DNA from: Vitrella brassicaformis CCMP3155
Lineage: Eukaryota; Protista; Chromerida
Direction of reading: 5' to 3'
NCBI GenBank assembly: GCA_001179505.1
Contig: CDMY01000523.1
Span: forward strand, 1-57,834
Length of the DNA: 57,834 nucleotides
In this document: positions 34,373 to 57,834 of the stretch, in pieces
Layout of the letters: each line of letters starts with the position of its first letter
Position numbering within the stretch: the first letter of the stretch is position 1
Made by a program: the position numbers and the translations under genes
The notes under the pieces: model-generated
Told to the model about the DNA's origin: nothing
Databases searched by the model: none
What the model saw: the letters and a program-made list of their open reading frames with translations, nothing else

Positions 34373-37300
34373 ATGGCGACGACCACAAAAAAGGCCGGAG
34401 CCCAAATGCCGGCTGTGCCGCCCTCCTGCCCAGCGAAGCCGCCACCTCTGCGGTACCTGAGGGAAGTCTGCGGCGACCTGGGCAGCACGGGCATCAAGCT
34501 GGCCATCCAGGTACGGACACAAGCACACAACGCACGGAGAAGTCGGTACAAGAGATCTCCCGTGGATGGATGGAGAGGCAGTTCGCCCTCACCCACAGTT
34601 TTTTGCAGCGGCGTGAGGAGGGCAGGCGGACCGGCGCTCAGAAGAGGGCGAGGTAGCCGACAAGGGAGGAGATGATCTAACGCTTCGCGAGGGCGAGAGG
34701 AGATGAGTTGGTACCTGCCTGCTGTCTGTATCCGTGTGTGTGTCATCAGGTGGCTGGCTGCGACTGACGCCCGCCCAGGGGGACCGCAGGTGAGTGCGCA
34801 CGAGTGTGTGGCACACACACAGCCGACGAGGCATTCGTTTCCCCACTGTGCAACCTCTCCGTCTGTGTGTGTGTGTGTGTGTGTGCGCAGAATAGCCCTG
34901 ATATCGCTGACGAGGATGGCGAGCGAGGACACGAGAAGAGTTGCGCCTCCGCACCACCATTGCGAGTGCCCAATAGGCAACATGTCTATCGGTCTCTATA
35001 TATATCTCTCTCTCTGTGTCTCTGTGTGCTGCAGGCTCTTGACAAGCGTACACAGATGGACACGCCACACACACGACACACAATGACTCTATGTGTACGT
35101 GCGTGCAGAGGCGAGGGATCGTGAGACCGATGCGCCGCCTGCCGACGCTCAAGTACACACACACACACACACACACACAGCAGCGATGCTTACGTGACTT
35201 CTCTCCTTCTTTCCCCTCTCTTTACAGCAACGCGCAAAGAGGAGCCCTCTACCTCAAACGAGACCGCCGAGGTCGCCACCTTCGTTGAGCCGTGTCTGCT
35301 GTAGGGAAAGAGCTGGGGGAATAGACGGTCAGTAACATAACCTCACTGATGCATTTACGTGTACACGTGTACGAACGAACTTTTCTGGGCAGGGCCTCCG
35401 TCACGGGTGCGGGTGCGAGTGCGAGCAGCGTAAGCCATCCATCTGTGACTGAGACCCTATAAAAAGCCCGATGTGATCGGCAGGCTGCCCCCTCGCGGAT
35501 GGGCTACACACATGGGTGGGCAGATAGACAGACCAGCGTATGGATGGATGGATGGATTGTTTGTGTGTCTGTCCATGCAGGACGCCAGTCGTCTCAAGAG
35601 CACCAACCTCCGTCTGATGGCCGGGTCACACATGTATGTGCTCACACGCCTATGTGTTGCCATCCGTCCATCTCTACCATCTGTGTGCGTCTGCGTGTGC
35701 AGGATCCCCCGCCGAGATAAAGCTCACACAGGAGGGGAAGACGCATACTTCATCTGTGACACTGCTGGTACAGTACGACGCTCGCACACACAGACAGAAG
35801 TGAATGGATGCATCCATCCATCCATCCACGTGTGTACGTTTGAGTGCAGGCGGCGGTGGTGTGGGCGTGGCTGACGGGGTGGGCGAGTATTCAGAGTTCG
35901 GCTTCAGCGCTAAGGCATTTGCCGAGGAGCTAATGGGCGGCTGCACTCGCCACCAGCACGATAACAGCCACATGCAGCCCCGGTATGTAATGTATACATG
36001 CAGAGAGACATTCATTCCCCCCTCACGTGTGTCTGTGTGTCTGTGTCTGTGTGTGTCTGTCTGTCTACAGATGTGTCGCCGGTGTCGTCCGCCTCTACAG
36101 CGAGCTGTGAGAGAACGCCTCGGCCCGGCGTCAACCGCTTCCCCGTGTTCCCCGCCATCCCGCTGGTGCTAGTGCAGGAGACCACAAGGGGGATGCCTCC
36201 GGTACGTAAGTAAAAGAAGCGCGCTTCACAGACAGAGGGACCTCTCTACCCTCACAGGCTCACCGACCGACGCGGCATCGCCTCCTGGGGAGGTCGCCCG
36301 AGGGTATGGACGGATGGCTAGATATGAGGGCGTGCATGTTATCATCCATCTGTGTCTATCTGTCTGTCGGTCTGTCTGCCTTTTGGTGGTGTATGCAGGC
36401 TGATCCAGTACGGCTACGGGTGCACTCACTCGTGCGGCGCATCGACAGCTCTCGTTGCAGCACTTGATGGACCGGTATGTAGGTGGATGGGTCGCTGGGT
36501 GCCTCTGGATGCCTCTGGATGGATGTGTGTGTGTGAATCAATCAATCAGAGCGGCAAGCTGGGGGCGGCCAATCTCGGCGATTCCAAAATGCTCGTCCTT
36601 AGGTTAGTGAGTCAGGAGATTGCATTCACTCAGTGTGTGTACCAGAATGGGCGTGTGCAGGCGCCAGAAGAACCGGCAGATGACCGTGGTCCTCCACACC
36701 AGGGAGCAGCAGCACGCATTCAATTGCCCTTTCCAGGTGGGCTGTGAGTGCGACGTGTCTGGGNNNNNNNNNNNNNNNNNNNNNNNNNNNNNNNNNNNNN
36801 NNNNNNNNNNNNNNNNNNNNNNNNNNNNNNNNNNNNNNNNNNNNNNNNNNNNNNNNNNNNNNNNNNNNNNNNNNNNNNNNNNNNNNNNNNNNNNNNNNNN
36901 NNNNNNNNNNNNNNNNNNNNNNNNNNNNNNNNNNNNNNNNNNNNNNNNNNNNNNNNNNNNNNNNNNNNNNNNNNNNNNNNNNNNNNNNNNNNNNNNNNNN
37001 NNNNNNNNNNNNNNNNNNNNNNNNNNNNNNNNNNNNNNNNNNNNNNNNNNNNNNNNNNNNNNNAACACAAAGGCAAACCAATCTCTCTCTCTCTCTCTCT
37101 CTGTGTGTGTGCGTGTGCTATGCAGCTGTCCAGGCACCCAGAGCCGAGCCAGCACGAGTCCCTACTGGCGACAGGCGACGACAAGGTAAGTACAGTATCT
37201 GATGTGGTCATGTATCTATCTGATGTGGGTGCGTATGTGTCCTCCAGAGGGGAGGAAGACCGGGACGACGTGCTGGATGACGAGGAAGATTTTGAAGGGA

Positions 37301-37675
37301 AGGATGAGTTCAGGCGTGTGCTGGAGTTGAAGGCGTTCGTTCGCAAGTGCCAGCAAGGCTTTTGCGTCGCTGCGGTACACACATGTATTTGTATGGTCAC
37401 TAAGACACAAATTTGTGTGTGCGTGGTTCGTGTGTGTGCAGGACACTGCGGAACAGGCGAAAGTCACCACGTCAAGGTGCAGGAAGGCGACCTCCTCCTC
37501 CTGGGCACAGATGGTACATACCATGCACACACAAAGAGAGTAGATACACAGAGAGATGAGATATGCACGCTTACGTGTTTGTGTCCACGTGCGGTTCACA
37601 GGTCTCTTCGAGAACCTCTTTGACTACGAGAGTTGTGACATCGCCAGCCTTGCGCTTTCACCATACGAATCGGAG
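34373..37675 (+). pseudogene. PTC7/PPTC7-type PP2C phosphatase copy A (no CBM48; disabled and 3'-truncated as assembled)
   Basis: Exon 1 (PAVPPSC...STGIKLAIQ) and linker exons are homologous to the gene at 52454. PP2C motifs GGEDAYF, ADGVGE, ANLGDS, QQHAFNCPFQ and GTDGLFENLF are present. In-frame TAG at 35302-35304. The final GGKxDD exon was not found after 37675. Confidence 0.75.
36764..37063. other. Assembly gap (300 N)
   Basis: Run of N within an intron of PP2C copy A. Confidence 1.
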
Positions 37676-37926
37676 GTGAGCCGGCACCCACCAACCCCCA
37701 CACACATGGATGGATGGATCCCCCGGACACACACACGGGCAGTGAAGACGCATGTCTGTTTGTTTGTCTGTCTGTCTGTTTGTGCAGGACGGACATCGGT
37801 GTCTATATTTTATATTTGACAAGACCTTTGATGACTTACCAGACAGCAGGCATCGCCCTCCGGTATATATTCTGTGTGTGTGAGTGTGTTGACGGAGGGA
37901 TGGCTGGTATGTGTGTGGGTGTGCAG

Positions 37927-38792
37927 GGCGAGAAGCTCGGCGTCGCTAAGCTCGGCGACTCGAAAATGGTCCTTCTGCGGTAAGCTAGTGCACCTGCCTC
38001 CATCCAAAATTGCCTCCATCCATCCATCCATCCGTGTGTGTCTGTGTGTCTGTGTGTGCAGGTGGTGGTGCTCTGGTTGTTGCCGATGGGGTCGGCAGCT
38101 ACGCGGCTTTCGGCCTCAACGCCAAGGTGTTTGCGGACGAGCTGATGGGCGGCTGCCAGCAGGCCGCCACCATCGCTCTCACCGACACGGCCACACCCAC
38201 TTCTTCTGGTGCTGGCGATGGTGGTGCTAGTGCTGGGGTCAACGCGGAGGCTGCAGGGGCGTATCTGAGTGAGATACGCGGGAGTGCGCTGGCCCCCGCG
38301 CAAGTCGCCCACAGGTATGGAAGATTATCCTGGTGAATGCGAGTGTGTCTTGTGAGTATTATCGTTGTCTGTGCAGACTGCTCCAGTACGGCTACTCCTG
38401 CACGAGGTCCATCGGCGCATCGACCGCACTCACTGCGCACCTGGACAGGGCGGTGACCATTCGCAGAGGCCTTTGATGCGTTCATTGGTTCATCTGTGTG
38501 TATATGTGTGTGTGTGTATCAGAGTGGGAGGTTGGGTGTCGCGAATCTCGGAGACTCGGGCATGATAGTCCTTCGGTCAGTGACAGTGAATGGATGAGTG
38601 TCTGTACCTTCTCGGCGTATGTGTGGGTGCGTGCAGCCGCCATGAGAAGGGCAGAATGACGGTGCTCCTCAGGACCAAGGAGCAGCAGCATGAATGGAAG
38701 ATGCCCTTCCAGGTCAGTGCCGTTGCCGCACGCACACACACTCTCACACACAATCTCTCTCTTTCTGTGTGTGTGTGCAGCTGGCCCGGTCG
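37927..38792 (+). pseudogene. PTC7-type PP2C fragment(s), copy B, with out-of-order exons
   Basis: A GEKLGVAKLGDSK exon (37927-37979) precedes the ADGVGSY exon (from 38062). 38062-38792 is nearly identical to 41357-42395. Ends in an N gap. Confidence 0.75.
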
Positions 38793-39092
38793 NNNNNNNN
38801 NNNNNNNNNNNNNNNNNNNNNNNNNNNNNNNNNNNNNNNNNNNNNNNNNNNNNNNNNNNNNNNNNNNNNNNNNNNNNNNNNNNNNNNNNNNNNNNNNNNN
38901 NNNNNNNNNNNNNNNNNNNNNNNNNNNNNNNNNNNNNNNNNNNNNNNNNNNNNNNNNNNNNNNNNNNNNNNNNNNNNNNNNNNNNNNNNNNNNNNNNNNN
39001 NNNNNNNNNNNNNNNNNNNNNNNNNNNNNNNNNNNNNNNNNNNNNNNNNNNNNNNNNNNNNNNNNNNNNNNNNNNNNNNNNNNNNNNNNNNN
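38793..39092. other. Assembly gap (300 N)
   Basis: Run of N joining a late exon of copy B to an earlier-type exon of copy C. Confidence 1.
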
Positions 39093-39114
39093 GTGTCTGT
39101 GTGTGTGTGTGCAG

Positions 39115-40226
39115 GGCGAGAAGCTCGGCGTGGCCAACCTCGGCGACTCGAAGATGATCCTGCTGAGGTAAGTTAGTGCACCTGCCTCCATCCATCCATC
39201 CATCCATGTGTGTGTCTGTGTGTGTGTGTGGGTGCATTTAGGCGGCAGAAGGACCAGAGGATGACGGTGGCCCACCACACCACCGAGCAGCAGCACTCCT
39301 GGAACTGCCCGTACCAAGTGAGGCAGTGCGTGACTGACCTGACATCCACACACATGTGTGTGTGTGCGTGCAGCTCTCTAGGCTGCCCGATGAGACCCAA
39401 TACGAACAGCTCGAGAGGGAGAACAAGAAAGAACACACAGATGCAGCCGTGTGTGACCTGTATGCGTGCAGAGTGAGCTCGTGCTCGTCAGGGTGTGCAA
39501 GAAGGCCAGAGAGGCCACAGACGGCGTGTCTCCCGGGGTATGTGTGTATGTCAACTGCACATGTGCACCACACACATAAAACACACCGAGTCACGTTCCC
39601 TCTCTCTCTCTCTCTCTGTGTCTGTGCGTGAAGGACACCCCCGACATGGCGCAGACGAGCGTGGCCACCGTCGTCGAGGGCGACCTCCTCATCATCGGCA
39701 CCCATGGTACACAATCCACACACATGCATCGCGCACACAGCCACGCGCATGCACTGGATGCGCACCCGTGTGCAGGCGTCTTGGACAACCTGTTTGACTC
39801 TGACATCTGCGAAAATCGCCAACCTCGCCCTGTCACCCTACGAGTCGATGGTAGGCACACGCCCGCAGACACACACAGAGAGAGAGGGGGGGGAAGGGGA
39901 GACGCACACCGGTACGTGTCTTTGCGTGTGTGTCTGCAGCTGGTCAACCGGGGGCCGCTAGCCACGCCTGCACGCCAGGTCGCCATCGCCATCGCAGAGG
40001 CTGCCAAGCACAGGAGGTACACACACAAAGCCAAGCCTATCCATCCGTCCGTCCATCCGTCCGTCCGTGTGCTTGTGTGCTATCTCTCTGCTGCTGCAGC
40101 GCCAATCCCTTCGCCAGGACCCCTTTCGCCAGGACTGCCAAGAGGGAGCAGCCCGACGACAGGAGCCTCCACCAAGGCGGCAAGCCAGACGACATTACCT
40201 TCGTCGCCGCCTGGGTGACTCGGTGA
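39115..40226 (+). pseudogene. PTC7-type PP2C copy C (3' half; GTHG variant, frameshift)
   Basis: ANLGDSK, QQHSWNCPYQ, GTHG (39697-39706), +1 frameshift at GAAAATC (39811-39817), and a terminal GGKPDDITFVAAWVTR*. Confidence 0.8.
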
Positions 40227-40930
40227 ATGATAGATGACGTGACCCAGACGACGAGCGCTCATGGACGTCTACAGCTATGGACTCATGTGCCGAGACGTCG
40301 GCATGTACGCGGCAAACGGGATGGATGGATGGATGGGACGGTGGGAGGGAGGCAGGGAGGCAGGGAGGGTATATGCTCAAGCGGGGTAATTTTGTCTGTA
40401 TGGTGGTGGTGTTGTGATGGCGAGGCATGCGGGCGGGCGGGCGGGCACACGCACCGCATCCACGTGTGTACCGGAGGAAAGGAAGACGGGGAAGGCCGTC
40501 TACGGCCGCAGGCAGACACACACACAAGAGAGAGGGGCGAGATGGTAGATGTGTCTACATACTCATCATTGTTTTAAGCCACACACACACGCACAGCGGC
40601 GGACACGTAGTGTACTCGGTTTCCACACGTACGTGCACATGCGCAATCGTGGCCAGGCAAGCAGGCAGGCGGACAGAAGTCCTCCCTCGTGCTGCAGGTG
40701 CTGTGCCGATAAGCTGCCTACATTTTATATTTCGTGGTCGTTTTCGCTGAGGCTACGCCGGGTAAAAAAGGGACACACACACACACACACATGCGTGTGC
40801 GAACAGACAGGCTCGCCAACCTGCTCACGGCCCCCCCTCTCGTCGGCATCGACAGCCTCTCGTCCAAGACCCAGTGGGTGCCACACATTAGTAGGTGTGT
40901 GTACACATGATCTGTGTGTGTTGTGGTCAG

Positions 40931-43298
40931 GTCGCTGAAGCACAAGTGGCCCGAGTCGGTGACAAGCCACCTGCACCCGCCCTAAGTGCTCATCGACCTC
41001 CATGTGCCCGTACAGGTCTGTCGTGACACACACACACATACATATCTATTGCTGAACGAACAACCCCTTTGTGTCTCTGGGTGCCCAGTTGAAGACGAAT
41101 TTGCGTCTCACCGCCGGAGCCTTCATGTACGTGCACTCCACCAGACCACACACGCACTGCCATCCATCCATCCATCCATCCCCCTCTCTCTCTCTATCTA
41201 TCTCTCTCTGTGCGTGTGTGTGTGCAGGATCCCCGACCCCGAGAAAGCCGAGACGGGCGGTGAAGACGCCTTCTTCGTCTGCGAGACTGCTGGTATGCAC
41301 GCTCACACGCACAAGTGGACGAAGGGGTGCATCCATCCATGAGTGTGTGTGTGCAGGTGGTGGTGCTCTGGGTGTTGCCGATGGGGTCGGCAGTTACGCG
41401 GCTTTCGGCCTCAACGCCAAGATGTTTGCGGACGAGCTGATGGGCGGCTGCCAGCAGGCCGCCACCATCGCTCTCACCGACACGGCCACACCCACTTCTT
41501 CTGGTGCTGACGATGGTGGTGCTAGTGCTGGGGTCAACGCGGAGGCTGCAGGGGCGTATCTGAGTGAGATAGCGCAGCTGGCCCCCGCGCAAGTCGCCCG
41601 CAGGTATGGAAGATTATCCTGGTGAATGCGAGTGTGTCTTGTGAGTATTATCGTTGTCTGTGCAGACTGCTCCAGTACGGCTACTCCTGCACGAGGTCCA
41701 TCGGCGCATCGACCGCACTCACTGCGCACCTGGACAGGGCGGTGACCATACGCAGAGGCTTATGATGCGTTCATTGGTTCATCTCTGTGTATATGTGAGT
41801 GTGTGTGTTTGTGTGTCAGAGTGGGAGGTTGGGTGTCGCGAATCTCGGAGACTCGGGCATGATAGTCCTTCGGTCAGTGACAGTGAATGGATGAGTGTCT
41901 GTACCTTCTCGGCGTATGTGTGGGTGCGTGCAGCCGCCATGAGAAGGGCAGAATGACGGTGCTCCTCAGGACCAAGGAGCAGCAGCATGAATGGAAGATG
42001 CCCTTCCAGGTCAGTGCCGTTGCCGCACGCANNNNNNNNNNNNNNNNNNNNNNNNNNNNNNNNNNNNNNNNNNNNNNNNNNNNNNNNNNNNNNNNNNNNN
42101 NNNNNNNNNNNNNNNNNNNNNNNNNNNNNNNNNNNNNNNNNNNNNNNNNNNNNNNNNNNNNNNNNNNNNNNNNNNNNNNNNNNNNNNNNNNNNNNNNNNN
42201 NNNNNNNNNNNNNNNNNNNNNNNNNNNNNNNNNNNNNNNNNNNNNNNNNNNNNNNNNNNNNNNNNNNNNNNNNNNNNNNNNNNNNNNNNNNNNNNNNNNN
42301 NNNNNNNNNNNNNNNNNNNNNNNNNNNNNNNCGTGCGACACACACTCTCACACACAATCTCTCTCTTTCTGTGTTTGTGTGCAGCTGGCCCGGTCGCCGG
42401 ACGAGAGCAATCGGGATGCACTCGAGAAGGACGTGAAGGCATGCTTGCTTCCCTCACTAGACGAGGACAGCAGAGATGGATTGATGTGTGTGAATGTAAC
42501 ACATCCAGATGAAGGAGCTGGTGCGGCAGCTTAGGGAGGGCAAGCGCCTGGGAGTCGTCCCGGTAGGTGAACGACTAAGGTGCGAGTGTACCATCTGCAC
42601 GAATATATCATGTGTGTGTAGGACAAGCCCGAGGACGCCCAGCTGTACACCGTCGCCCTGCGGGAAGGAGACCTTCTCATCTTGGGCACCGACGGTGCAC
42701 ACACACACACACACACACACACATGCACACAGCCACACCCATGCGTTGGATGAACGCGCACCCGTGTGTGCAGGTGTCTTTGACAACCTCTTCGACGACG
42801 AGCTCTGTGGCATCGCCGACCTGACGCTCTCGCCGTCTGAGTCTCTCGTAGGCACACGCCCACAGACACACACAAAGAGAGGCCCTGAAGGGGAAGACCA
42901 CACGGGTACGTGTGTGTGCGTATGTGCGTGTCTGCAGGTGCTGAACGACCCGTCTCTAGCCACACCTGCGCGTAGCGTCGCCGCGGCAATCGCAGAGGCG
43001 GCCAGACACAGGAGGTACACACAGACACCAGACACCAGAGCCCGTCCATCTATCCATCCATCCATATGCTTATGTGCTGTCCCTGTGCTGCAGCATGGAT
43101 CCCCACTGCAAGACGCCCTTCGCCAAGACCGCCCGCCAGAACAACACCCACCACACGGGCGGCAAACTGGACGATGTCACAGTAGTCGCCGCCTGGGGAA
43201 AGACTTCACCAGACACTCCAAACACTGAATCTCCCACAGAAGGCATGTATACATGCTCAAATAAGGCACTCCCGAATAAGGCTCAAATTGCTGCCTGA
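40931..43298 (+). pseudogene. PTC7-type PP2C copy D; catalytic domain complete but an upstream exon has a nonsense codon
   Basis: GGEDAFF, ADGVGSY, ANLGDSG, GTDGVFDNLF and GGKLDDVTVVAAW are all present. The upstream exon 40931-41009 has TAA at 40983-40985 where the paralog (56300-56378) has GAA. GC donor at 42439. Confidence 0.75.
42032..42331. other. Assembly gap (300 N), probably near-zero true length
   Basis: The flanks correspond to sequence that is contiguous in copy B (about 38715-38760). Confidence 0.95.
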
Positions 43299-43545
43299 TT
43301 GTGTGTTGAGCAGATGTGTGTGGCGATCGCTGCCTTCATTTTATATTTCGTTGTCATTTCCTTCGCCCGCTGACGCGACGCCGGGAGGAAAAGAGAGTAT
43401 CAACGTCATTCAGTGGTCAACGCGGGTAAAAATGGGACACACACACATTCGTCCAATCCATGGAGGCACACCATCACAGACACATGGACACACACACCAT
43501 CACAGACACATGGACTCACACACACATGCGTGTGCAAACGAACAG

Positions 43546-44654
43546 GCTCGCCGACTTCTTCACTGACCCCCCTCTCATCTGCGTCGACGGCCTCGTCCAA
43601 GACCCATCGGCCGACCCCGAGCAGCGGTGCTGGTGGCGGTGAGACCGTGGCCGTCAAGGAGGGGACCTGCCGCCCGAGGGAGGCATACCTGCAGGAGATC
43701 CAGCGGGTGGACCTTCCGCCAGAGGAGATCGCCCTCAGGTACTGAAAAGGTGTCGATGGATGGATGGATGGACGGCCGTGTTCGGGTGTGCAGGATCTTG
43801 CAGTACGGCTATATATATGTACACCCGTGCCTATGGCTCATCACAGCACTTGTCGTCGTATACCTCGACAAGAAGGTCAGTGACCTTTCCTGTTTCACAA
43901 ATCCATCCATCTGTCCGTCTGTGTACCTATGTGTGTGTCTGTGTGTATTTGTGCAGGGCGAGACGCTGGCCGTCGCCAACCTCGGCGACTCTAAGATGAT
44001 CCTTCTGCGGTAAGTGCACCTGCCTCCATCCATCCATCCATGTGTGTGTGTCTGTGTGTGTGTGGGTGCATTTAGGCGGCAGAAGAACCAGAGGATGACG
44101 GTGCCCCATCACCAACGAGCAGCAGCACTCCTGGAACTGCCCGTACCAAGTGAGGCAGTGCGTGACTGACCTGACATCCACACACATGTGTGTGTGTGTG
44201 TGTGCAGCTCTCTAGGCTGCCCGATGAGACCCAATACGGAGAGCTCGAGAGGAAGAAAAAGAAAGAACACACAGATGCAGCCGTGTGTGACCTGTCATAA
44301 TGCGTGCAGAGAAAACTCGGCAGGGTGTGCAAGAAGGCCAGGCAGGGCAGAGACGGCGTGTCTCCTGGGGTATGTGTGTAAGTTAACTACACATGTGCAC
44401 CACACCCTCTCTCTCTCTGTGTGTGTCTGTGCGTGAAGGACACCCCCGACATGGCGCAGAAGAGCGTGGCCACCGTCGTCGAGGGCGACCTCCTCATCAT
44501 CGGCACCCATGGTACACAATCCACACACATGCATCATGCACACAGCCACGCGCATGCACTGGATGCGCATCCGTGTGCAGGTGTGTTCGACAACCTCTTC
44601 GACTGTGACTTCTGCGACATCGCCAGCCTGGCCCTGTCACCCTCTGAGTCCCTA
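43546..44654 (+). pseudogene. PTC7-type PP2C copy E (middle exons; frameshifts; GTHG variant)
   Basis: EAYLQEIQRVDLPPEEIALR and ANLGDSKMILLR are present. Frameshifts near 43815 and 44110 relative to paralogs, CAT (His) at 44508-44510, and truncation after LSPSESL. Confidence 0.8.
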
Positions 44655-44747
44655 GTAAACACACGCCCACAGACATACACAGAGAGAGAGAGGGGCTCAC
44701 ACGGGTACGTGTATGTGCGTGTCTGTCTGTCTGTCTGTGTATGTCTG

Positions 44748-45110
44748 AAGCCTTCAGCACGTGCTGTGATAGAACACTTCTTTCTCCTCGGGCTCCAAGC
44801 TCGCAGATCTATCGCTGCCTTTGTCCGTTATCGCTACAAGCTTCCCACTCTGTACTCTGTAGCTATAATTGCGATACTTTCCAGTTGCGGCCTCGAGGAG
44901 GCCTCTTCGCAGATCTCCGGCGAGTATGTTCCAACACATGGCGACTCCGGCGAAAATGGCACGATTGCTGCGGGTGCTGTGCAGAGGTTTCTGGCGGCTC
45001 TGGTGGTGATGAGATTGTGGTCGTCAAAGAGGGTGAGACATACCTGGAGGAGATCAAGCGAATGGACCTGCCGCCTGAGAAGATCGCGCACTTACACATG
45101 TACATTAAGG
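44748..45110 (+). pseudogene. Deleted relic of a CBM48-PP2C-family gene: promoter/exon 1 fused to an internal PP2C exon
   Basis: 44748-44950 aligns to 52296-52570 (CCTTCAGCACGTGC, GGCTCCAAGCTCGCAGATCTATCGC, CTCGAGGAG.CCTCTTC, GAGTATGTTCCAACA). 45030-45090 encodes GETYLEEIKRMDLPPEKIA as at 57215-57270. Confidence 0.75.
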
Positions 45111-50199: not shown

Positions 50200-52217
50200 T
50201 AATCGCAGACACTCATTTTTGTCTCTCGAGCTCGAGAAGTCACTAGTACAGCCCAGCTTATTGTCGGACGATGCCTCATAATCATCTTGATCAACAGACA
50301 ACAGAGGGCAAACCTACGCCGTGATCAAAATCTGTTTCTCGGCGTGTCTCTGTGCACTGGACCCACCAATTTGCCTCGTTGGGCTTCGAGTAGCTCGAGC
50401 ACCATTCCTTGCTCGTGCTGACAGTTGCATTGCTTCAGGACTAGCGCAAAGGGGAGTTGGGGCCGTCTCATTTTGACAGAAAGCGTTGACAGAAGGCGTT
50501 GACGCGTTGCCTCACTGGGCAGCCCCACCGCGACCGGCGATGTGGGGCCGTCTTATTTCAGCAACGCACCGTGGCTTGGGTGTTGGCCACCCACGGCAGA
50601 TGCGCCTTGTCACGAGCCTGCTGCCGCCCCCTCTGCCGTGGTGGCTGTCTGCCCCGGCTGCATCTCCCTCTCAATGATAAAGCGGTCGCCAGAAGGTGTT
50701 GTCGTGGAACCCCAGGTCAGCCATTCTCCACTGTGACACGGGTACACAGAGGTGCTCAGCGGAGCTGCCTACGGGCCAGCTGGGGTCTTTGAGGCCGTCG
50801 GCAAGCGCACCAATGGCGGGGCTAGCGACGTGCGCGAGTCTTTCCAGTCGTCGGAAAATGTTGAGAACATGCCCCGCCTCGGGCAGCTGCCACAGCCGCG
50901 CAGCGTCCCTCTGGTATATGTCCCACGCCTGTGTGAAGAAGCCCCTCGCTGAAGCAGGCAGGCTGCTAAAGGCAGGGTTGCCGACCTTCCCCGGCCTCCT
51001 GCTGCTCTCGAACAGCACGTAAGAGCCCAGGCGGTCGTCGTGGCGTGTGACGTGTGCGTGTCCGAGGTAGGTGTCGCGGAGGAGGGTGACGAATCGGTGG
51101 AAATCCTCGGACCCCAGCGGGTCGATGGACGACGTAAAGGGCTGCAGAGTGTGCTCCAGCAGGGCGGGGGTCACCTTGTCGGCCAAACGGAGCCGATGCA
51201 GCACCTCTATAGCCTGGGAAAAGGTGAACTCAGACAGCCTGCAAGGACACAGCGAGACAGTTACGACATAAGTTCATGACGCGGGAGGCACGTATTTGCT
51301 CACCTTGTCTGGAGCTGTTGTGCAATGGCATCAATGAGAGCATCAGTGGTGTTGGTTGGGGCCCAGTGGTCGGGTCGCCCTCTACGATACTGCACCGTTG
51401 CCCCCGCCCCCGCCAGCAGCCGCACAAGGTCGCTGTCTGTGGCGTTGCTGTGCTGCAGAGCCGCACTTTCCAATCGCTGCACGGCATCCCTCACCGTGCT
51501 GCCGACATTCCACCCCCGTCATGCGGACGAGGCGGCCGTAGTCCTCCGCCTCCAGCTTGAGCAGCAGGTGGTCGTCCATCAGGGTGAGGCACGTGACGGC
51601 AAGGAGGTCTTTGGTCTTGCTTCGCCGCTCGTTGAGCAGGCTGAAGACGACGTGCGCCGTCCTGTTGGCGTCCACACTCGCCCGATTCTGGCGGATCTTA
51701 ACAACACTCTCCTGCCGCTGGCTCAGCAGCGACGAGTAATTGGGGCCGTCGTCGTTGAACAGTTGCATGTTGTTTCTGAGCCACTTGCCGCGGTCATAGG
51801 CGAAGAAACGTTGAAGGGCAACAGCTCGTCCAGACGCTCGTCGACAAACACTGCAAACGACGGCACGTCCTTGGTCAGGTTGTAATCGCCCGCCCGCTCA
51901 GAGTCCACCTTCCTCAGCTCAACCAGGCCGCCGCCGCCACCACGAGAGTCCCCGTTGGCGAGAGTGGGGGCGCTGGTGAAAATTGAAATGGCAATCAGCA
52001 GCGACACTCAGGTCCACCACAGATCTCCCAACCGCCGCTCGTAGGGCCGGTCTGCCGCTCTGCTTGCGCATGCCATGCTGGCGGGAGATGGCGGGTGGGT
52101 CAAGGACGCCGTGAGTGAGTGGGGAGTCGGCGGGCGGTACGAGGTGGTGCGGATGGGCAGCAGGAGGGCCACGTACATGCTGCATAACGATGCTGCATCG
52201 AGCCAGTAGTGGTGCAT
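50200..52217 (-). pseudogene. Pseudogene of an unrecognised family with an N-terminal hydrophobic anchor
   Basis: Protein-like text runs through successive frames (ORFs 52008-52217, 51723-52007, 51382-51768, 51300-51494, 50671-51204). It has an in-frame TGA at about 52008, frameshifts at about 51790 and 51500, and a GT-AG intron at about 51243-51303. Confidence 0.65.
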
Positions 52218-52453
52218 CGAGATGCATGCTGGCGATGTCAGCGGACCTTGAGCATCGTATAAGCGTGGTAACGAGACCAGGAGGGACAGCAGAACCCTTC
52301 AGCACGTGCGTGAAGAAGATCCTTCTTCTTCCTCCCCAGGCTCCAAGCTCGCAGATCTATCGCCACGTTTCTTCGTGTTCGCCGACGCTTGAATGCCACA
52401 AGCAGAGGCCTAGGCCTTGGAGCGTCCATCAAGCAGAGCCTCCACCCGGGACC

Positions 52454-55009
52454 ATGATGCCCCAGCATTTGCCCGACGACTCGACTCTGCCGCCCAGGCC
52501 TCCCAATTGCTCCCTCGAGGAGCCCTCTTCTCGGATCTGCAGGAGTATGTTCCAACAGCTGGCCACTCAGACCGGAATCCCCGCACGCATCAAGGTGACC
52601 ACCACGGGAGGGACAGGGAGGCACAAGCAGACACGAGGGAGGGGACTTCCCTCCCTCGTGTGTGCCTCGTGTGTGGGGCGGGCTGGGCCGTCCGTCCGTC
52701 CGTCCCTCCCTCGTGTGTACCTGGGCTAGACCTCGTGCTGATTGCCCGATGTGTGTGTCGATTGATGTTGATGAATGCAGGAGGGGGCGATCTGCGCCTA
52801 CCGTATCATGCGCAGGGCGGAGTACAGGCGGCGAACTGAGGCGAGCAGGCGCGAAAGGGCGCCTTCACGGGAGCAGGTCAGTCAAGGAAAGGAGTTACCT
52901 CAGTCACCTTACGCACAGGCAGACGGACAGACGGGCAGACAGACAGACAGACACAGGGTGGGGAGGCAGGCAGACAAGGAGAGAAATACCGACCGATGGC
53001 TGGTGCCTGACCCAATCGACGACACAGCGGCTATGTGTGTGTGTGTGTGTGCGTGTGGTCAGAGCCTGGCTAGAGCCAAGCAGCGTATCGAGCAAGCCGA
53101 AGCGCGAGGGTATAAGGGCCTCTCGGAGACCCTGGAGGACCAGAAGTTGACGCCCACATTCCTGCGCACTGAAACACCCACACAGCCACTCCAGGCGTCA
53201 GCACAAGGTCGGCGGGGTGGGCCGCTGCACTCAATCGGCAACACGCGGCGCAGGCAGACATGGCCACGCTGGCTCGACTGATTCCCGGTTGTTCAAACAT
53301 TGGTTCGTTTGTGTTTGTGTTTGTGTGTTTGTGTGTTGGTGTGTCGGTTGGCAGTTGCAGGTCGTATTGCGTCCCCTGTGTCGGCCCCTCCCCCGTCCGC
53401 CCCGCCTCCGTCCGCACAGCGCACTGCACCACACGAGCAGCAACCACAGACCTCCAGAGGTGGGCGACCAGCGCACGCCCCATCACTCATGACAGATTGC
53501 CGGTGCCATGTCATGTGGTGCTGTGTTGTGTTGTGTCGTGTTGTGTGGTGTTGTGTTGTGGTGACTGTTCAGGTACGGATGCGTCGACCACGGCGGCTAC
53601 GACCTCGACAGGCAGCATCACATCGTTGCGCAACTTGGGTAAGTACGCACGTCACGCACGCGGGCGGGCGGGCAGGGGCGAGTGGGGCAAGACCCACTAC
53701 CCCACCAACCACTCGATGGATGTCGTTCGTGTGTGTGTGTGTGTGTGTGATTGTGTGGTTGATCGTGTCGTCCGTCACGTCAGGGACTGAGTACGGCGGC
53801 AGTCCCTCGGCCAAAACTGCACCCATCCGACTCTCGCCCGACACGAGGTCAGTTCAGTGAGTGATTGGGGCGCTGTCACACAGCCGCACCAACACAGGCA
53901 CTGTCTGTGTATCTATCGTCTGTCTGCTGTGTGTGCTTCAGTCGGAATGACATCATGTTGTTGAAGTGGGAGATGCCGGGCAAGTACGTCGAGGTGGCGG
54001 GGGCCTTCCCCAACCCCGCTTGGGAGGTTAGACTCCCACTCTTCAAGTGCCCGCGGTAGACATCCATCCATCCATCCATCCACACACGCCTCTCTGCACA
54101 CGCCTCTCTCACTGTGCTGTGCTGTGTTGTGCTGTGTTGTGTTGTGCTGTGTTTGACGTGTGTCGTCCATCCCATCATTCATTCGCAGCACTGGAGTCTT
54201 CTGGTTGTCGTTGCAAGAGGCCTTGCCGGCGGTGCAGTCCGGCGTCTATCAGTTCAAGTACATCGTCGACGACGAGTGGAAATGCGACATGTCACTGCCG
54301 ACGAAAGACGTAAGTGTCCTCGTGACACACACACACACACACACACACATGGATGCATTTGTATATGTGTGTGTGTGATGTTCGTATGCAGGATGGTAGT
54401 GGCAACACCAACAACAGCATGATGGTGGTGGCAGCTGCTGGTATCCTAGAGTGGAAACATCCCGCACAGCGGACCGTCTTACTGGCGGGTGCGCAGCCAC
54501 ACTCACACAGGGAGAGAGAGAGAAAGAGAGAGCGACATGGATTCCCATTGTATCTATGGGGTGCTGAAATGTGTACGCACATTCAGGGTCATTCACAGAG
54601 CCGCCATGGAAGCGACAGATGCCGCTCGCCTATGACCCACGGTCAGTGCTGTGGACGAGTGAATGGGCGATCAAACACGTGGACCTGATCTGCACACCTC
54701 TTTGTGTGTGTGTGTGTGGGTGCCTAACTATGCAGAGATTCCACCTACCGGATCTCGCTTCAAGAAGCCGTCCCGGAGCTGCGGCCCGGTACGGCTGTGG
54801 CACACACACGTGGAAAGGTCCGACGAGCGACGTGTGTGTGGTCTGTGGTTTGCTGTGGGCCATCACATGTGAGCAGGGTCCTATCAGTTCAAGTACATCG
54901 TCGACGACGAGTGGAAATGCGACCCGTCACTCCCGACACAAAATGTAAGTGTCCTCGTGACACACACACACACAGAGGCGTCTGCGTGTACACACATCGG
55001 TGCATTCCC

Positions 55010-55042
<33 letters not shown>

Positions 55043-57834
55043 TCTATGATGTGCAGGATGGCAGCGGCAACATCAACAACGTGCTGCACTATCATCGACC
55101 ACCCGCCGCACCATCACCATCACCACCAGCCCCACCAGCCCCATCACCACCAGCCCCATCACCACCAGCCCCAGCCCCTCCAGCCCCAGCCCCTCCAGCC
55201 CCAGTCCCAGCACCCGCACCAACAACGGCATCAACAATAGAACTTCCTGCACGAGTACGTGTCTTTGTTCGTGGCCACAGCCGACGAGGCATTGATTTCA
55301 TCTGCCCACTGTGTGTGTGTGTCCGTGTGTATCACATCAGAGTGGTGACGGTCATCGTCGCCGTCGCCATCCCGCCGATGAGCCGCTCGACTTCTCATCA
55401 TTGCCTGACGTGGAGGGCAGCGGCAGCGACACAGAGGAGGAGCAGGACCAAGGTGAGTGATGGATTGAGGGAGGGAAGAGTGTGTTGGGTGTGAGAACGG
55501 CCAGCCATTCATCGGCCGGTGTGTGTGTGTGTTTTGGTCTGTGGTTGTCAGGCTGCCTGTCGCCCCCTGGGCACCGACACTCGTCGGCAACGGACACCAC
55601 CCGGGCGTCCACAAGCGGGAGTGACAGCTCACCCACAGCACACAACGTAAGCAGCCCCACATCGACCAACAGACAGAGAGATAGAGACACACGCACAGAC
55701 ATGGACACACACGAAGCGCAACGGCTCCTTTGTCTGCCTTTCCTTTCCCTCAGGCCGACCGGTTGCCGCCCACATTGCCCTCGCCGCCTGAGGTGAGTGA
55801 GCAGCCGCCGTCTACCCCTGCCGCTGCCGCTGCTGAGGATGAGGGCCCTTTGGAGAGCGACCGTGACATCGAGCCGCTGGAGCTGCAGGGCAAGGGATGG
55901 GCGAGAAGACGGTCAGTCAACCAGCACCATTGCGGCCTCACACACACGCGACACACACATGTGTGTCTTGATGTGTGCAGGGCGTCTGTGGGCACGCCGA
56001 ATGCCACTGCGAGTTCGAGGACTGCTGACGGGCTCCGGAGAAGTTCGGGAGGTCTGCGCAGATCGTCGGCCGTTGACGCCACTGATGCACTCGGGTATGT
56101 AAGCGCGCACACACATTTTCCCCCTTTATTTTTGTGTGTCTGTGTGCGCGTGTGTGCGTGTAGGGGTCTGTCTGCGCACCAGCCTTCGAATGAGTCGCTG
56201 CGTGAGGATCGGCTCAGACGCGTCGCGTCCCTGTAAGTGCTCGTTGTCGATTGCGGACAGCAAATTCTATTGTTGTGTTGTTGTGTGCGTTGTGGTCAGG
56301 TCTTTGGACCACAAGTGGCCGGAGTCGGTGACGGCCCACCTGCACTCACCCGAAGTGCTCGTCGACCTGCACGTCCCCGTATGTGAATTCTATAATATGC
56401 AGATGAGTGCTGTGTGTGTATGTGTGTGTATGTGTGTGTGTTTGCAGGACGACCGTCTTTCCACCAAGTTGCGGCTGAATGCGGGAGCCTTCATGTACGT
56501 CTGTCTCTTCCACCAGACACACTCGACACGCACTGCCGCCCATCCATCCATTCTTGCATCTCTCTCTCTGTGTGTGTGTGTCTGTGTGTGTGTGCAGGAT
56601 CCCCCACCCCGAGAAGGTCGAGACGGGCGGTGCCGACGCGTATTTCATATGCGAGATCGCCGGTAGGCACATCCATCCATCCATCCATCCATGTGTGTGT
56701 GTATGTGTGTGTATGTGTGTGTGTGTGTGTCTGTGGGTGTAGGCGGTGGTGCCCTTGGCGTGGCTGACGGTGTTGGCGAGTGGGACTCGTTCGGCCTCAG
56801 CCCCAAGATGTTCGCCGACGAGTTGATGCGGGGGTGCCAGCAGGCGGCCATCCTGGCACTGACGGACACCGACACACCAACAGCGTCATCAGCCGCACCA
56901 GCACCAGCAGCAGCAGCTGCTGCTGCTTCTGCTTCGTCGAGCGCTGCTTCCGCTGCTGCCGCTGCCGCTGCCGCAGCGGACACTGAGACGGGAGTGCGAG
57001 AGAAGGACGCCTCTGGTACTCTAACTAATATGCACCATTACAGACACATGGCCTCACACACATGCGTGTGCAAACAAACAGGCTCGCCGACCTGCTCACT
57101 GACCCCCCTCGCGTCGGCCTCGACGGCCTCGTCCAAGACCCACCAACCTTCCCCGAGCAACGGCCACGGCGGCAGCGATGGCGACAGGGGCGACAGCGGC
57201 AACACTGAGGAGGGCGAGACCTACCTGGAGGAGATCAAGTGCATGGACCTGCCGCCCGAGAAGATCGCCCTGAGGTAGGAATATTCTTTGTGTGTGTGTG
57301 TGTGTGTGTGTTGACGGATGGATGGACGGGTGTATCTGTGTGTGTGTAGGATGATGCAATACGGGTACACCTGCACCCGTTCCTACGGCGCATCCACGGC
57401 ACTTGTCGCCTATCTCGACACGAAGGTCAGTGAATGAGCTTTCGTCTTCCACACACCCCTCTATCCATCCATTCATGTGTGTGTGTGTGCAGGGCGAGAA
57501 GCTAGGCGTCGCTATCCTCGGCGACTCGACCATGATACTCCTCAGGTAAGTCAGGCAAGGCACCTGCCTCCATCCATCCATCCATGTGTGTGTCTGTGTG
57601 TGTGTGTGGGTGCGTGCAGACGGCAGAAGGTCTACAGCATGACGGTTGTGTAGCGGACCAAGGAGCAGCAGCACTCCTGGAATTGCCCATACCAGGTGTG
57701 TGGCTGTCTGTCTGTCTCTCTGTCTGCCTACCTACCTGGATGGACGGATGGATGGATGCGTGTGTGTGTGCAGCTGTCTCGACTCCCTGACGAGAGCCGG
57801 TACAACGAGCTCGAGAGGGAGGGCAAGGTGCGCT
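52454..57834 (+). CDS. Tandem CBM48 (AMPK-beta glycogen-binding type) x2 plus Pro-rich linker plus PTC7/PPTC7-type PP2C phosphatase; runs off the window; one in-frame TAG
   Basis: 27 exons are visible and the introns are GT-AG and phase-compatible (first exons 52454-52594, 52781-52876, 53063-53207; last 57493-57545, 57620-about 57695, about 57773-57827). CBM48-1: LKWEMPGKYVEVAGAFPNPAW...GVYQFKYIVDDEWKCD...GNTNN. CBM48-2: LEWKHPAQRTVLLAGSFTEPPW...GSYQFKYIVDDEWKCDP...GNINNVL. PP2C: GGADAYF, ADGVGEW, AILGDS, QQHSWNCPYQ. TAG at 57651-57653 is codon 895. Confidence 0.85.
55090..55225 (+). repeat. Coding Pro/Ala/Ser tandem repeat linker (PAPSP/PAPAP)
   Basis: Degenerate 15-nt CCAGCCCC(A/T)(T/C)CACCA-type units in the exon after CBM48-2. 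Confidence 0.85.

What the first reader, a model, noticed from the sequence alone, without database searches (positions are those of the whole stretch)
52454..57834. Two glycogen/starch-binding CBM48 domains fused to a PTC7-type PP2C phosphatase
Seen in sequence: 25 consecutive phase-compatible GT-AG introns join two AMPK-beta-like CBM48 repeats (53942-55090) to a PTC7-family PPM domain (from 56448). Established: the known glucan phosphatases (plant SEX4/LSF1 with CBM48, laforin with CBM20) use dual-specificity phosphatase domains, while PTC7-type enzymes (yeast Ptc7, PPTC7, plant PBCP) are metal-dependent PP2Cs that normally lack CBMs. Inference: this may be a convergent, PPM-based glucan phosphatase or a granule-anchored regulator of starch enzymes in an alveolate alga. 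I do not know of a characterised example but cannot search.
Basis: partly seen in the sequence, partly recalled or inferred. Interest (0 to 1): 0.85.

Follow-up and report, generated by a model that had tools for sequence, protein, structure and literature searches.

The report
Starch-binding modules fused to PP2C phosphatase
This Vitrella gene really does join two starch-binding modules to a PTC7/PBCP-type protein phosphatase, but the design is shared by dozens of uncharacterised alveolate proteins, and this copy has an internal stop codon and runs off the end of its contig.

Summary
Window 52454-57827 (+) is one spliced gene of Vitrella brassicaformis CCMP3155 (CEM20277.1). It has 27 exons and 26 GT-AG introns, and spliced RNA contigs show 12 of those introns directly.

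The protein has a disordered N-terminus, two tandem CBM48 modules, a 269-aa disordered linker and a PTC7/PBCP-class PP2C domain.

Two caveats:
- An in-frame TAG (57651-57653) replaces a Glu codon (GAG) that a paralog and an environmental relative keep.
- The contig ends in intron 27, so the last two metal-binding motifs are missing.

The architecture is not unique. I found 45 database proteins with CBM48 followed by this PP2C type. They come from Chromera, Vitrella paralogs, Eimeria, Cyclospora, Hammondia, gregarines, Platyproteum, ciliate-like sequences and metagenomes. A dinoflagellate-like subclade carries CBM20 instead. I found no paper that characterises any of them.

The most likely function is a starch-granule-tethered protein Ser/Thr phosphatase. 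A glucan phosphatase is unlikely. This copy may be recently disabled.

The scan flagged the same architecture twice elsewhere in this genome (s1-199387, s1-246607).

The parts
52454..53847 (+). Exons 1-6: start codon and disordered N-terminal region (about 205 aa). No signal peptide or transmembrane segment.
   Evidence: Model. RNA contigs span introns 1, 5 and 6. No Pfam hit. Hydropathy maximum 0.41 in the first 75 aa.
53955..54430 (+). CBM48 repeat 1 (aa 209-295; exons 7-9)
   Evidence: AMPK1_CBM on exons 7 and 8 (0.035 and 8.6e-7). Family HMM 2.5e-37. RNA contig X7 record 12 joins 54055 to 54189.
54443..55095 (+). CBM48 repeat 2 (aa 300-386; exons 9-13)
   Evidence: Pfam residues 300-385. 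Family HMM 7e-40. AlphaFold pLDDT 93-98; Foldseek to AMPK beta2 CBM 4YEE gives TM 0.91, rmsd 1.3 A. Trp/Lys/Trp/Asn ligand positions are kept.
55096..56447 (+). Disordered Pro/Ser/Ala-rich linker (269 aa; exons 13-19). It ends in a family-conserved LRRVAS motif (exon 18, 56164-56232) and a WP..V..LH.PE element (exon 19).
   Evidence: 83% disorder-promoting residues. No Pfam hit. Motif conservation. A 678-nt spliced RNA contig runs from 55376 through exons 15-20 into exon 21.
56448..57827 (+). N-terminal two thirds of a PTC7/PBCP-class PP2C domain (exons 20-27). Present: GADAYF, GVADGVGEW, GASTA, LGDS, EQQHSWNCPYQL. Missing beyond the contig end: GTDGVFDN and GGKxDDITV.
   Evidence: Alignment to paralog P0002. 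HMM positions 1-296 of 426 are covered. PBCP 6AE9 is the best PDB hit for the paralog's domain.
57016..57081 (+). Intron 22: 66 nt, in frame, no stop. It is translated in the public model CEM20277.1 but spliced out in the paralog's cDNA.
   Evidence: P0001 contains the 22 extra residues. The paralog's cDNA lacks them. RNA contigs begin at 57081.
57651..57653 (+). In-frame TAG in exon 26, at a codon that is GAG (Glu) in the paralog gene and in an environmental relative.
   Evidence: 31-mers carrying the T are held by runs X9, X5 and X10. The public protein ends here.
57828..57834 (+). First 7 nt of intron 27, then the contig ends, just before a (CA)n microsatellite seen in the paralog.
   Evidence: Alignment A1. 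Contig length equals window length.

Best explanation
The locus is a single transcribed Vitrella gene. It is one of at least three Vitrella paralogs of an alveolate-wide family in which an N-terminal CBM48 is tethered by a flexible linker to a PTC7/PBCP-class (PP2C7) metal-dependent phosphatase.

Proposed mechanism (inferred):
- The CBM48 modules dock the protein on cytosolic starch granules.
- The disordered linker lets the PP2C domain reach phospho-Ser/Thr on granule-associated proteins such as starch-metabolising enzymes.
- The enzyme would thus act as the granule-resident counterpart of CBM20-bearing kinases such as Toxoplasma CDPK2.
- A conserved LRRVxS motif upstream of the catalytic domain is a candidate regulatory phosphosite.

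This copy has a lineage-specific tandem duplication of the CBM48. It also carries a derived GAG-to-TAG change inside the PP2C domain. It is therefore either a recently disabled or truncated paralog, which would make a non-catalytic double-CBM48 protein, or an intact enzyme whose TAG is an assembly or strain artefact. The 3' end lies beyond the contig.
For: Shown:
- Gene model and splicing.
- CBM48 x2, with glucan-contact Trp/Lys/Trp/Asn conserved across 28 family members.
- PP2C7 class: PBCP 6AE9 at E 3.5e-27 by sequence and TM 0.86 by fold.
- All metal-binding Asp are invariant in the family.
- A full-length cDNA of paralog CEM20443.1 carries CBM48 and PP2C in one ORF.
- 45 proteins show the same domain order. 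They form a supported alveolate clade, 99/94.
- There is no signal peptide, which fits the cytoplasmic starch granules of Toxoplasma (PMC9729606; extended to Vitrella by inference).
- dN/dS is about 0.3 across the CBM and PP2C parts and 0.11 in the 32 codons after the TAG.

Context: Toxoplasma PP2A regulates amylopectin but does not bind granules (PMC9729606). That leaves room for a granule-bound phosphatase.
Against: - No biochemical or localisation data exist for any member.
- Substrates are unknown.
- This copy's PP2C is interrupted by a TAG, and its last two catalytic motifs are not in the assembly.
- RNA contigs did not cover exons 26-27, so neither the TAG nor the 3' end is confirmed in mRNA.
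- Every RNA contig covering 56029 (runs X6, X7, X1) disagrees with the assembly there, which shows the contig or strain sequence is not error-free.
Confidence: 0.6

Rival explanations
1. This particular copy is a recently inactivated pseudogene, or a truncated non-catalytic double-CBM48 scaffold analogous to the inactive LSF1. Intact paralogs would carry the phosphatase function.
For: - TAG at a conserved Glu codon.
- The T-bearing 31-mers are found in three runs from three samples.
- The public model ends there.
- No RNA contig was laid on exons 26-27 although upstream exons are covered.
- The gene sits beside a tandem array of PP2C7 copies, so redundancy exists.
Against: - The codons after the TAG are still under constraint: 31 of 32 aa identical to the paralog, dN/dS 0.11.
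- Only 2 sampled words support the T, and several runs of the same samples lack them.
- The transcript is expressed and spliced.
Confidence: 0.4
2. It is a convergent, PPM-based glucan phosphatase that removes phosphate from starch itself, as SEX4, LSF2 and laforin do.
For: - CBM48 is the module used by SEX4 and LSF1.
- The family appears only in alveolate lineages, several of which (coccidia, chromerids, dinoflagellates) store starch or amylopectin.
Against: - The catalytic motifs match those of the protein phosphatase PBCP, and no PPM is known to act on glucans (from memory).
- The CBM and the catalytic domain are separated by a disordered linker of 57-716 aa rather than forming the integrated interface seen in SEX4 (the SEX4 comparison is from memory).
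- At least in Toxoplasma the glucan-phosphatase role is already filled by TgLaforin (PMC9254107).
Confidence: 0.07
3. There are two separate genes, a CBM48 protein and a PP2C, wrongly merged by reading through.
For: - The long low-complexity linker has no domain.
- The 55254-to-55341 junction was not among the joints printed.
Against: - Exon 13 itself encodes both the end of CBM48-2 and the start of the linker.
- A 678-nt spliced RNA contig runs from exon 14 into exon 21.
- The paralog's complete cDNA and 45 homologs have the same fusion.
Confidence: 0.02

Closest known systems
PBCP (rice, PDB 6AE9; Arabidopsis At2g30170), yeast Ptc7 and human PPTC7: the PP2C7 class of Kerk et al. 2015
   Same: Catalytic fold and motifs: GxDAxF, ADGVGxW, GSxTA, LGDS, EQQHxFNxPxQL, TDGxxDN, DDITV. 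PBCP is the best sequence and structure match.
   Different: No CBM was reported for the 228 of 251 PP2C7s surveyed by Kerk et al. that lack any accessory domain. PBCP, Ptc7 and PPTC7 are organelle-targeted (from memory); this protein has no targeting signal. The alveolate family adds a conserved LRRVxS / WP..V..LH.PE N-terminal extension.
CBM20-PP2C7 fusions: Chlamydomonas and Volvox (noted in Kerk et al. 2015, PMC4524716) and dinoflagellate-like proteins P0072 and P0084
   Same: A starch-binding module lies N-terminal to a PP2C7 domain. These proteins are also uncharacterised. The CBM20 clade nests inside the alveolate CBM48 clade.
   Different: The CBM family differs (20 versus 48). The window copy is the only one seen with two complete CBM48 modules.
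Glucan phosphatases SEX4, LSF2 and laforin, and the inactive scaffold LSF1
   Same: A phosphatase-type domain combined with CBM48 or CBM20 in starch or glycogen metabolism. The CBM48 here matches SEX4 and LSF1 weakly.
   Different: Those use a Cys-based dual-specificity (Cx5R) domain with an integrated CBM interface and act on the glucan (from memory). Here the chemistry is metal-dependent PPM and the tether is flexible. No DSP domain is detected.
AMPK/SNF1 beta-subunit CBM48
   Same: Closest CBM fold: 4YEE at TM 0.91, 28-29% identity. Ligand-contact residues are conserved.
   Different: There is no C-terminal alpha/gamma-interaction domain (Pfam), so it is not a kinase subunit.
Toxoplasma CDPK2 (a CBM20-bearing kinase)
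   Same: The logic is the same: a signalling enzyme anchored on amylopectin by a CBM (PMC9729606, PMC11414933).
   Different: It is a kinase with CBM20, and it has been characterised experimentally.

Membership tests
CBM48 (Pfam AMPK1_CBM, PF16561) | Profile match above the curated threshold | tested here: met
   P0001 scores 116.7 bits against a cutoff of 26.8, in two stretches. Single exons score 29.5 and 27.5 bits.
CBM48 (Pfam AMPK1_CBM, PF16561) | Beta-sandwich fold superposable on the AMPK beta CBM | tested here: met
   Repeat 2: pLDDT 93-98, TM 0.91, rmsd 1.3 A to 4YEE. Repeat 1 was modelled only at pLDDT about 60, because the alignment rows covered repeat 2 only.
CBM48 (Pfam AMPK1_CBM, PF16561) | Glucan-contact residues (AMPK beta1 W100, K126, W133, N150; numbering from memory) | tested here: met
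   Both repeats keep W, K, W and NN. W122, K156 and N181 are invariant and W103 is nearly invariant in 28 family CBMs. The Leu146 equivalent is not kept.
CBM48 (Pfam AMPK1_CBM, PF16561) | Binds starch or glycogen | not testable with these tools
   Needs a pull-down or ITC.
PP2C7 / PTC7-type PPM phosphatase | Closest to PTC7/PBCP among PPMs | tested here: met
   Paralog domain against PDB: 6AE9 at 3.5e-27, next hit 3e-4. Foldseek 3.2e-21, TMt 0.86. The window's blocks are about 90% identical to the paralog.
PP2C7 / PTC7-type PPM phosphatase | Complete set of metal-binding Asp motifs | tested here: inconclusive
   Motif I (GADAYF), motif II (ADGVG) and LGDS are present. TDGxxDN and DDITV lie beyond the contig end.
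PP2C7 / PTC7-type PPM phosphatase | Uninterrupted reading frame through the domain | tested here: not met
   TAG at 57651-57653 where relatives have GAG.
Glucan phosphatases (SEX4 / LSF2 / laforin) | Dual-specificity phosphatase domain with a Cx5R catalytic loop | tested here: not met
   No DSP family appears in Pfam scans of the whole protein or of the paralogs.
Glucan phosphatases (SEX4 / LSF2 / laforin) | Releases phosphate from amylopectin or glycogen | not testable with these tools
   Needs an enzyme assay.
AMPK/SnRK1 beta subunit | C-terminal alpha/gamma-interaction domain (AMPKBI) | tested here: not met
   Only AMPK1_CBM was found in P0001.

The most novel reading that the evidence does not exclude
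The alveolate CBM48-PP2C7 family is a metal-dependent glucan phosphatase that evolved independently of the Cys-based SEX4 and laforin enzymes. The CBM48 would present phospho-amylopectin chains to a PPM active site.
Probability: 0.07. Interest if true: 0.85.

Novelty: new variant of a known kind. Interest (0 to 1): 0.45.

Why it matters
Phosphorylation controls starch and amylopectin turnover in coccidian parasites and probably in their algal relatives. A CBM20-anchored kinase (CDPK2) is known. The phosphatases implicated so far are PP2A and PP1, and PP2A was shown not to associate with granules (PMC9729606).

A conserved phosphatase that carries its own starch-binding module is an obvious, untested candidate for the granule-resident opposing activity. 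It is present from chromerids to Eimeria, Cyclospora and the Toxoplasma relative Hammondia, and it is directly testable in Toxoplasma or Chromera.

The value lies in the family. The window copy itself is a possibly disabled, incompletely assembled paralog.

Tried and rejected
- Exon-by-exon Pfam found nothing for the PP2C exons, which are too short. A 40-aa exon against PDB gave only weak hits.
- A scan of JGI metagenome and transcriptome contigs for a window-specific exon-26 pattern allowing T or G at the TAG found nothing. A protein-guided scan found only two distant relatives. The TAG therefore could not be checked in assembled transcripts.
- A search with the paralog's last 132 aa, meant to find the missing 3' end, found an ENA environmental contig (L005). 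That contig carries the paralog's variants across exons 26-27, not the window's, and has GAG.
- A profile search with a 12-sequence alignment returned only its first member, so that search was wasted.
- The ESM Atlas look-up gave only generic PP2C clusters.
- Using the AG of the TAG as an alternative acceptor would shift the frame, so it does not rescue the ORF (reasoned from the sequence).
- The donor at 54046 was rejected in favour of 54055 on RNA evidence.
- Read laying allows one call and did not show coverage over exons 26-27.
- All ten literature searches found no paper on CBM48 plus PP2C.
Full report
GENE MODEL. Reading 52000-57834 and assembling exons by hand gives 27 exons on the + strand from the ATG at 52454 to 57827. 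They are joined by 26 GT-AG introns of 66-186 nt (median 91). All are phase-compatible, and the only stop is a TAG at 57651-57653 in exon 26.

The window is the entire 57,834-bp contig of Vitrella brassicaformis CCMP3155. The gene is CEM20277.1 / A0A0G4FYK2 (P0001, 915 aa). The public model is identical to mine except in three respects. It starts at the second Met. It translates the in-frame 66-nt intron 22. It ends at the TAG.

RNA EVIDENCE. Four runs hold spliced contigs of this gene. The printed joints confirm introns 1, 5, 6, 10, 14, 15, 16 and 18. The printed pieces confirm introns 7, 17 and 24, and they fix the exon 7 donor at 54055.

One 678-nt contig, present in X6 and X7, starts in exon 14 (55376) and runs through exons 15-19. 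The depth arithmetic shows that it also covers exon 20 and, in X6, about 33 nt of exon 21, which encodes the first catalytic motif. Exon 13 is a single exon that holds both the last strand of CBM48-2 and the Pro-rich start of the linker. A 169-nt contig runs on 63 nt past its 3' end, although that joint was not printed.

No contig was laid on exons 26-27. The reference also differs from every covering RNA contig at 56029 (C in the assembly, G in the RNA of X6, X7 and X1).

DOMAINS. The CBM48 evidence is as follows:
- Pfam finds AMPK1_CBM on exons 7, 8 and 12, and twice in P0001 at 5.3e-34.
- The two repeats (aa 209-295 and 300-386) align to each other and to the AMPK beta2 CBM, LSF1 and SEX4.
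- An AlphaFold model of repeat 2 (pLDDT 93-98) superposes on 4YEE with TM 0.91 and rmsd 1.3 A.
- The Trp, Lys, Trp and Asn positions that contact cyclodextrin in AMPK beta (numbering from memory) are kept in both repeats. They are invariant or nearly so in 28 family members.

Residues 1-205 and 386-660 have no Pfam family and are more than 80% disorder-promoting residues.

The PP2C exons are too short for Pfam individually. A 176-aa stop-free stretch (56745-57272) retrieved the gene's own protein and a 988-aa paralog, CEM20443.1 (P0002). That paralog has one CBM48 and a complete PP2C. Its PP2C domain matches rice PBCP (6AE9) at 3.5e-27, with the next PDB hit at 3e-4. By fold the match is E 3.2e-21 and TM 0.86. 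This places it in the PTC7/PBCP (PP2C7) class.

The window encodes GADAYF, GVADGVGEW, GASTA, LGDS and EQQHSWNCPYQL. GTDGVFDN and GGKxDDITV would lie beyond the contig end.

THE TAG AND THE CONTIG END. In the paralog's cDNA (L002), in its gene (L001) and in an environmental contig (L005), the codon is GAG. The T is therefore derived in this copy.

All 31-mers across 57621-57681 contain that base. The two sampled words are held by X9 (possibly the source data), X5 and a marine sediment metagenome, X10. Several other runs of the same samples do not hold them.

Against the paralog, dN/dS is 0.28-0.31 before the TAG and 0.11 in the 32 codons after it. If the stop is real, it is therefore recent.

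The contig stops 7 nt into intron 27, exactly where the relatives continue into a (CA)n run. That is an assembly break, not a gene end.

I put the chance that the T is genuine in the sequenced strain at about 0.7. First-stage notes list several other in-frame TAGs in this genome. I did not test those.

THE FAMILY. Pfam and a local CBM48 HMM show the order CBM48 then PP2C in 45 fetched proteins:
- Vitrella: three CBM48-bearing paralogs, plus CBM-less ones.
- Chromera: Cvel_11390.
- Coccidia: five Eimeria species, Cyclospora and Hammondia (2449 aa).
- Other apicomplexans and relatives: Cardiosporidium; the gregarines Polyplicarium, Selenidium and Porospora; Platyproteum.
- Ciliate-like EukProt entries.
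- Many metagenome proteins.

The linker ranges from 57 to 716 aa. In an ML tree of 87 PP2C domains, these proteins fall in a supported alveolate clade (99/94). CBM48 is basal and widespread in that clade. Some members lack a CBM, and a nested subclade carries CBM20 instead, including a dinoflagellate entry. Only the window copy has two complete CBM48 modules.

All catalytic Asp residues are invariant. A conserved [LI]RR[VI]xS motif and a WP..V..LH.PE element precede the domain. The latter is modelled at pLDDT about 90, packed on the domain.

The two Vitrella paralog genes are 77-88% identical at DNA level, introns included, and one linker block sits in a different position.

MECHANISM. The domain identities, the conservation of ligand and metal residues, and the lack of a targeting signal are shown. 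The rest is inferred.
- The CBM48 modules would anchor the enzyme on cytosolic starch.
- The flexible tether would let a protein Ser/Thr phosphatase act on granule-bound phosphoproteins.
- The variable, disordered tether and the ordinary PPM active site argue against direct action on the glucan, but no assay excludes it.
- If the TAG is real, this copy would make a double-CBM48 protein with a non-functional PP2C stub, or be degraded.

LITERATURE. No paper combines CBM48 with PP2C. Kerk et al. 2015 defined PP2C7s and noted CBM20 on one Chlamydomonas and one Volvox member, without characterising them. In Toxoplasma, PP2A and PP1 affect amylopectin, PP2A is not granule-bound, and CDPK2 is granule-bound. 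A 2026 preprint on myzozoan starch metabolism does not mention this phosphatase.

VERDICT. The architecture is real, old and widespread among alveolates. It is visible in databases but, as far as I could search, uncharacterised. The window copy is an atypical, possibly disabled paralog cut off by the assembly.

Noticed in passing
window 35700-45100 (+): A tandem array of four or more complete or partial CBM-less PTC7-type PP2C copies, with repeated GEDAxF / ADGVG / GASTA / LGDS / EQQH / GGKxDDxT motif sets. The public protein CEM20273.1 (432 aa) looks like one full copy fused to part of the next.
   Followed up: partly
Three kinds of starch-related regulatory genes therefore sit within 22 kb.
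   Followed up: partly
window 57016-57081: The public gene model translates a 66-nt in-frame intron, adding 22 aa (TLTNMHHYRHMASHTCVCKQTG). The paralog's cDNA and the RNA contig starts indicate that it is spliced out.
   Followed up: yes
window 56164-56232 (exon 18) and homologs: A conserved [LI]RR[VI]xS[LMI] motif lies about 50 aa upstream of the PP2C domain in most family members. It fits a basophilic (CDPK/AMPK/PKA-like) kinase consensus and is a candidate regulatory or pseudosubstrate site.
   Followed up: partly
window 56029: All RNA contigs covering this base (runs X6, X7, X1) read G where the assembly has C (Asp to Glu). This is an assembly error, a strain difference or an RNA-DNA difference.
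   Followed up: no
window 54583-55801 versus L001 10478-12269: Between the two paralog genes, the acidic/Ser-rich linker block and the CBM48 block are in opposite order. The linker follows the CBM here and precedes it in CEM20443.1. This indicates a local rearrangement after duplication.
   Followed up: partly
same genome, other pieces (first-stage notes): Several first-stage notes report single in-frame TAGs in otherwise intact Vitrella genes (MND1, a RING protein, a receptor gene). If they are real, a common cause would be worth a genome-wide check: base errors, nonsense alleles in the culture, or readthrough.
   Followed up: no
L005 (ENA ERZ893784 k147_5920433): An environmental metagenome contig is about 87% identical to the 3' part of the Vitrella paralog gene, introns included, and has internally inverted segments. 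It is a wild Vitrella relative or an assembly chimera.
   Followed up: partly
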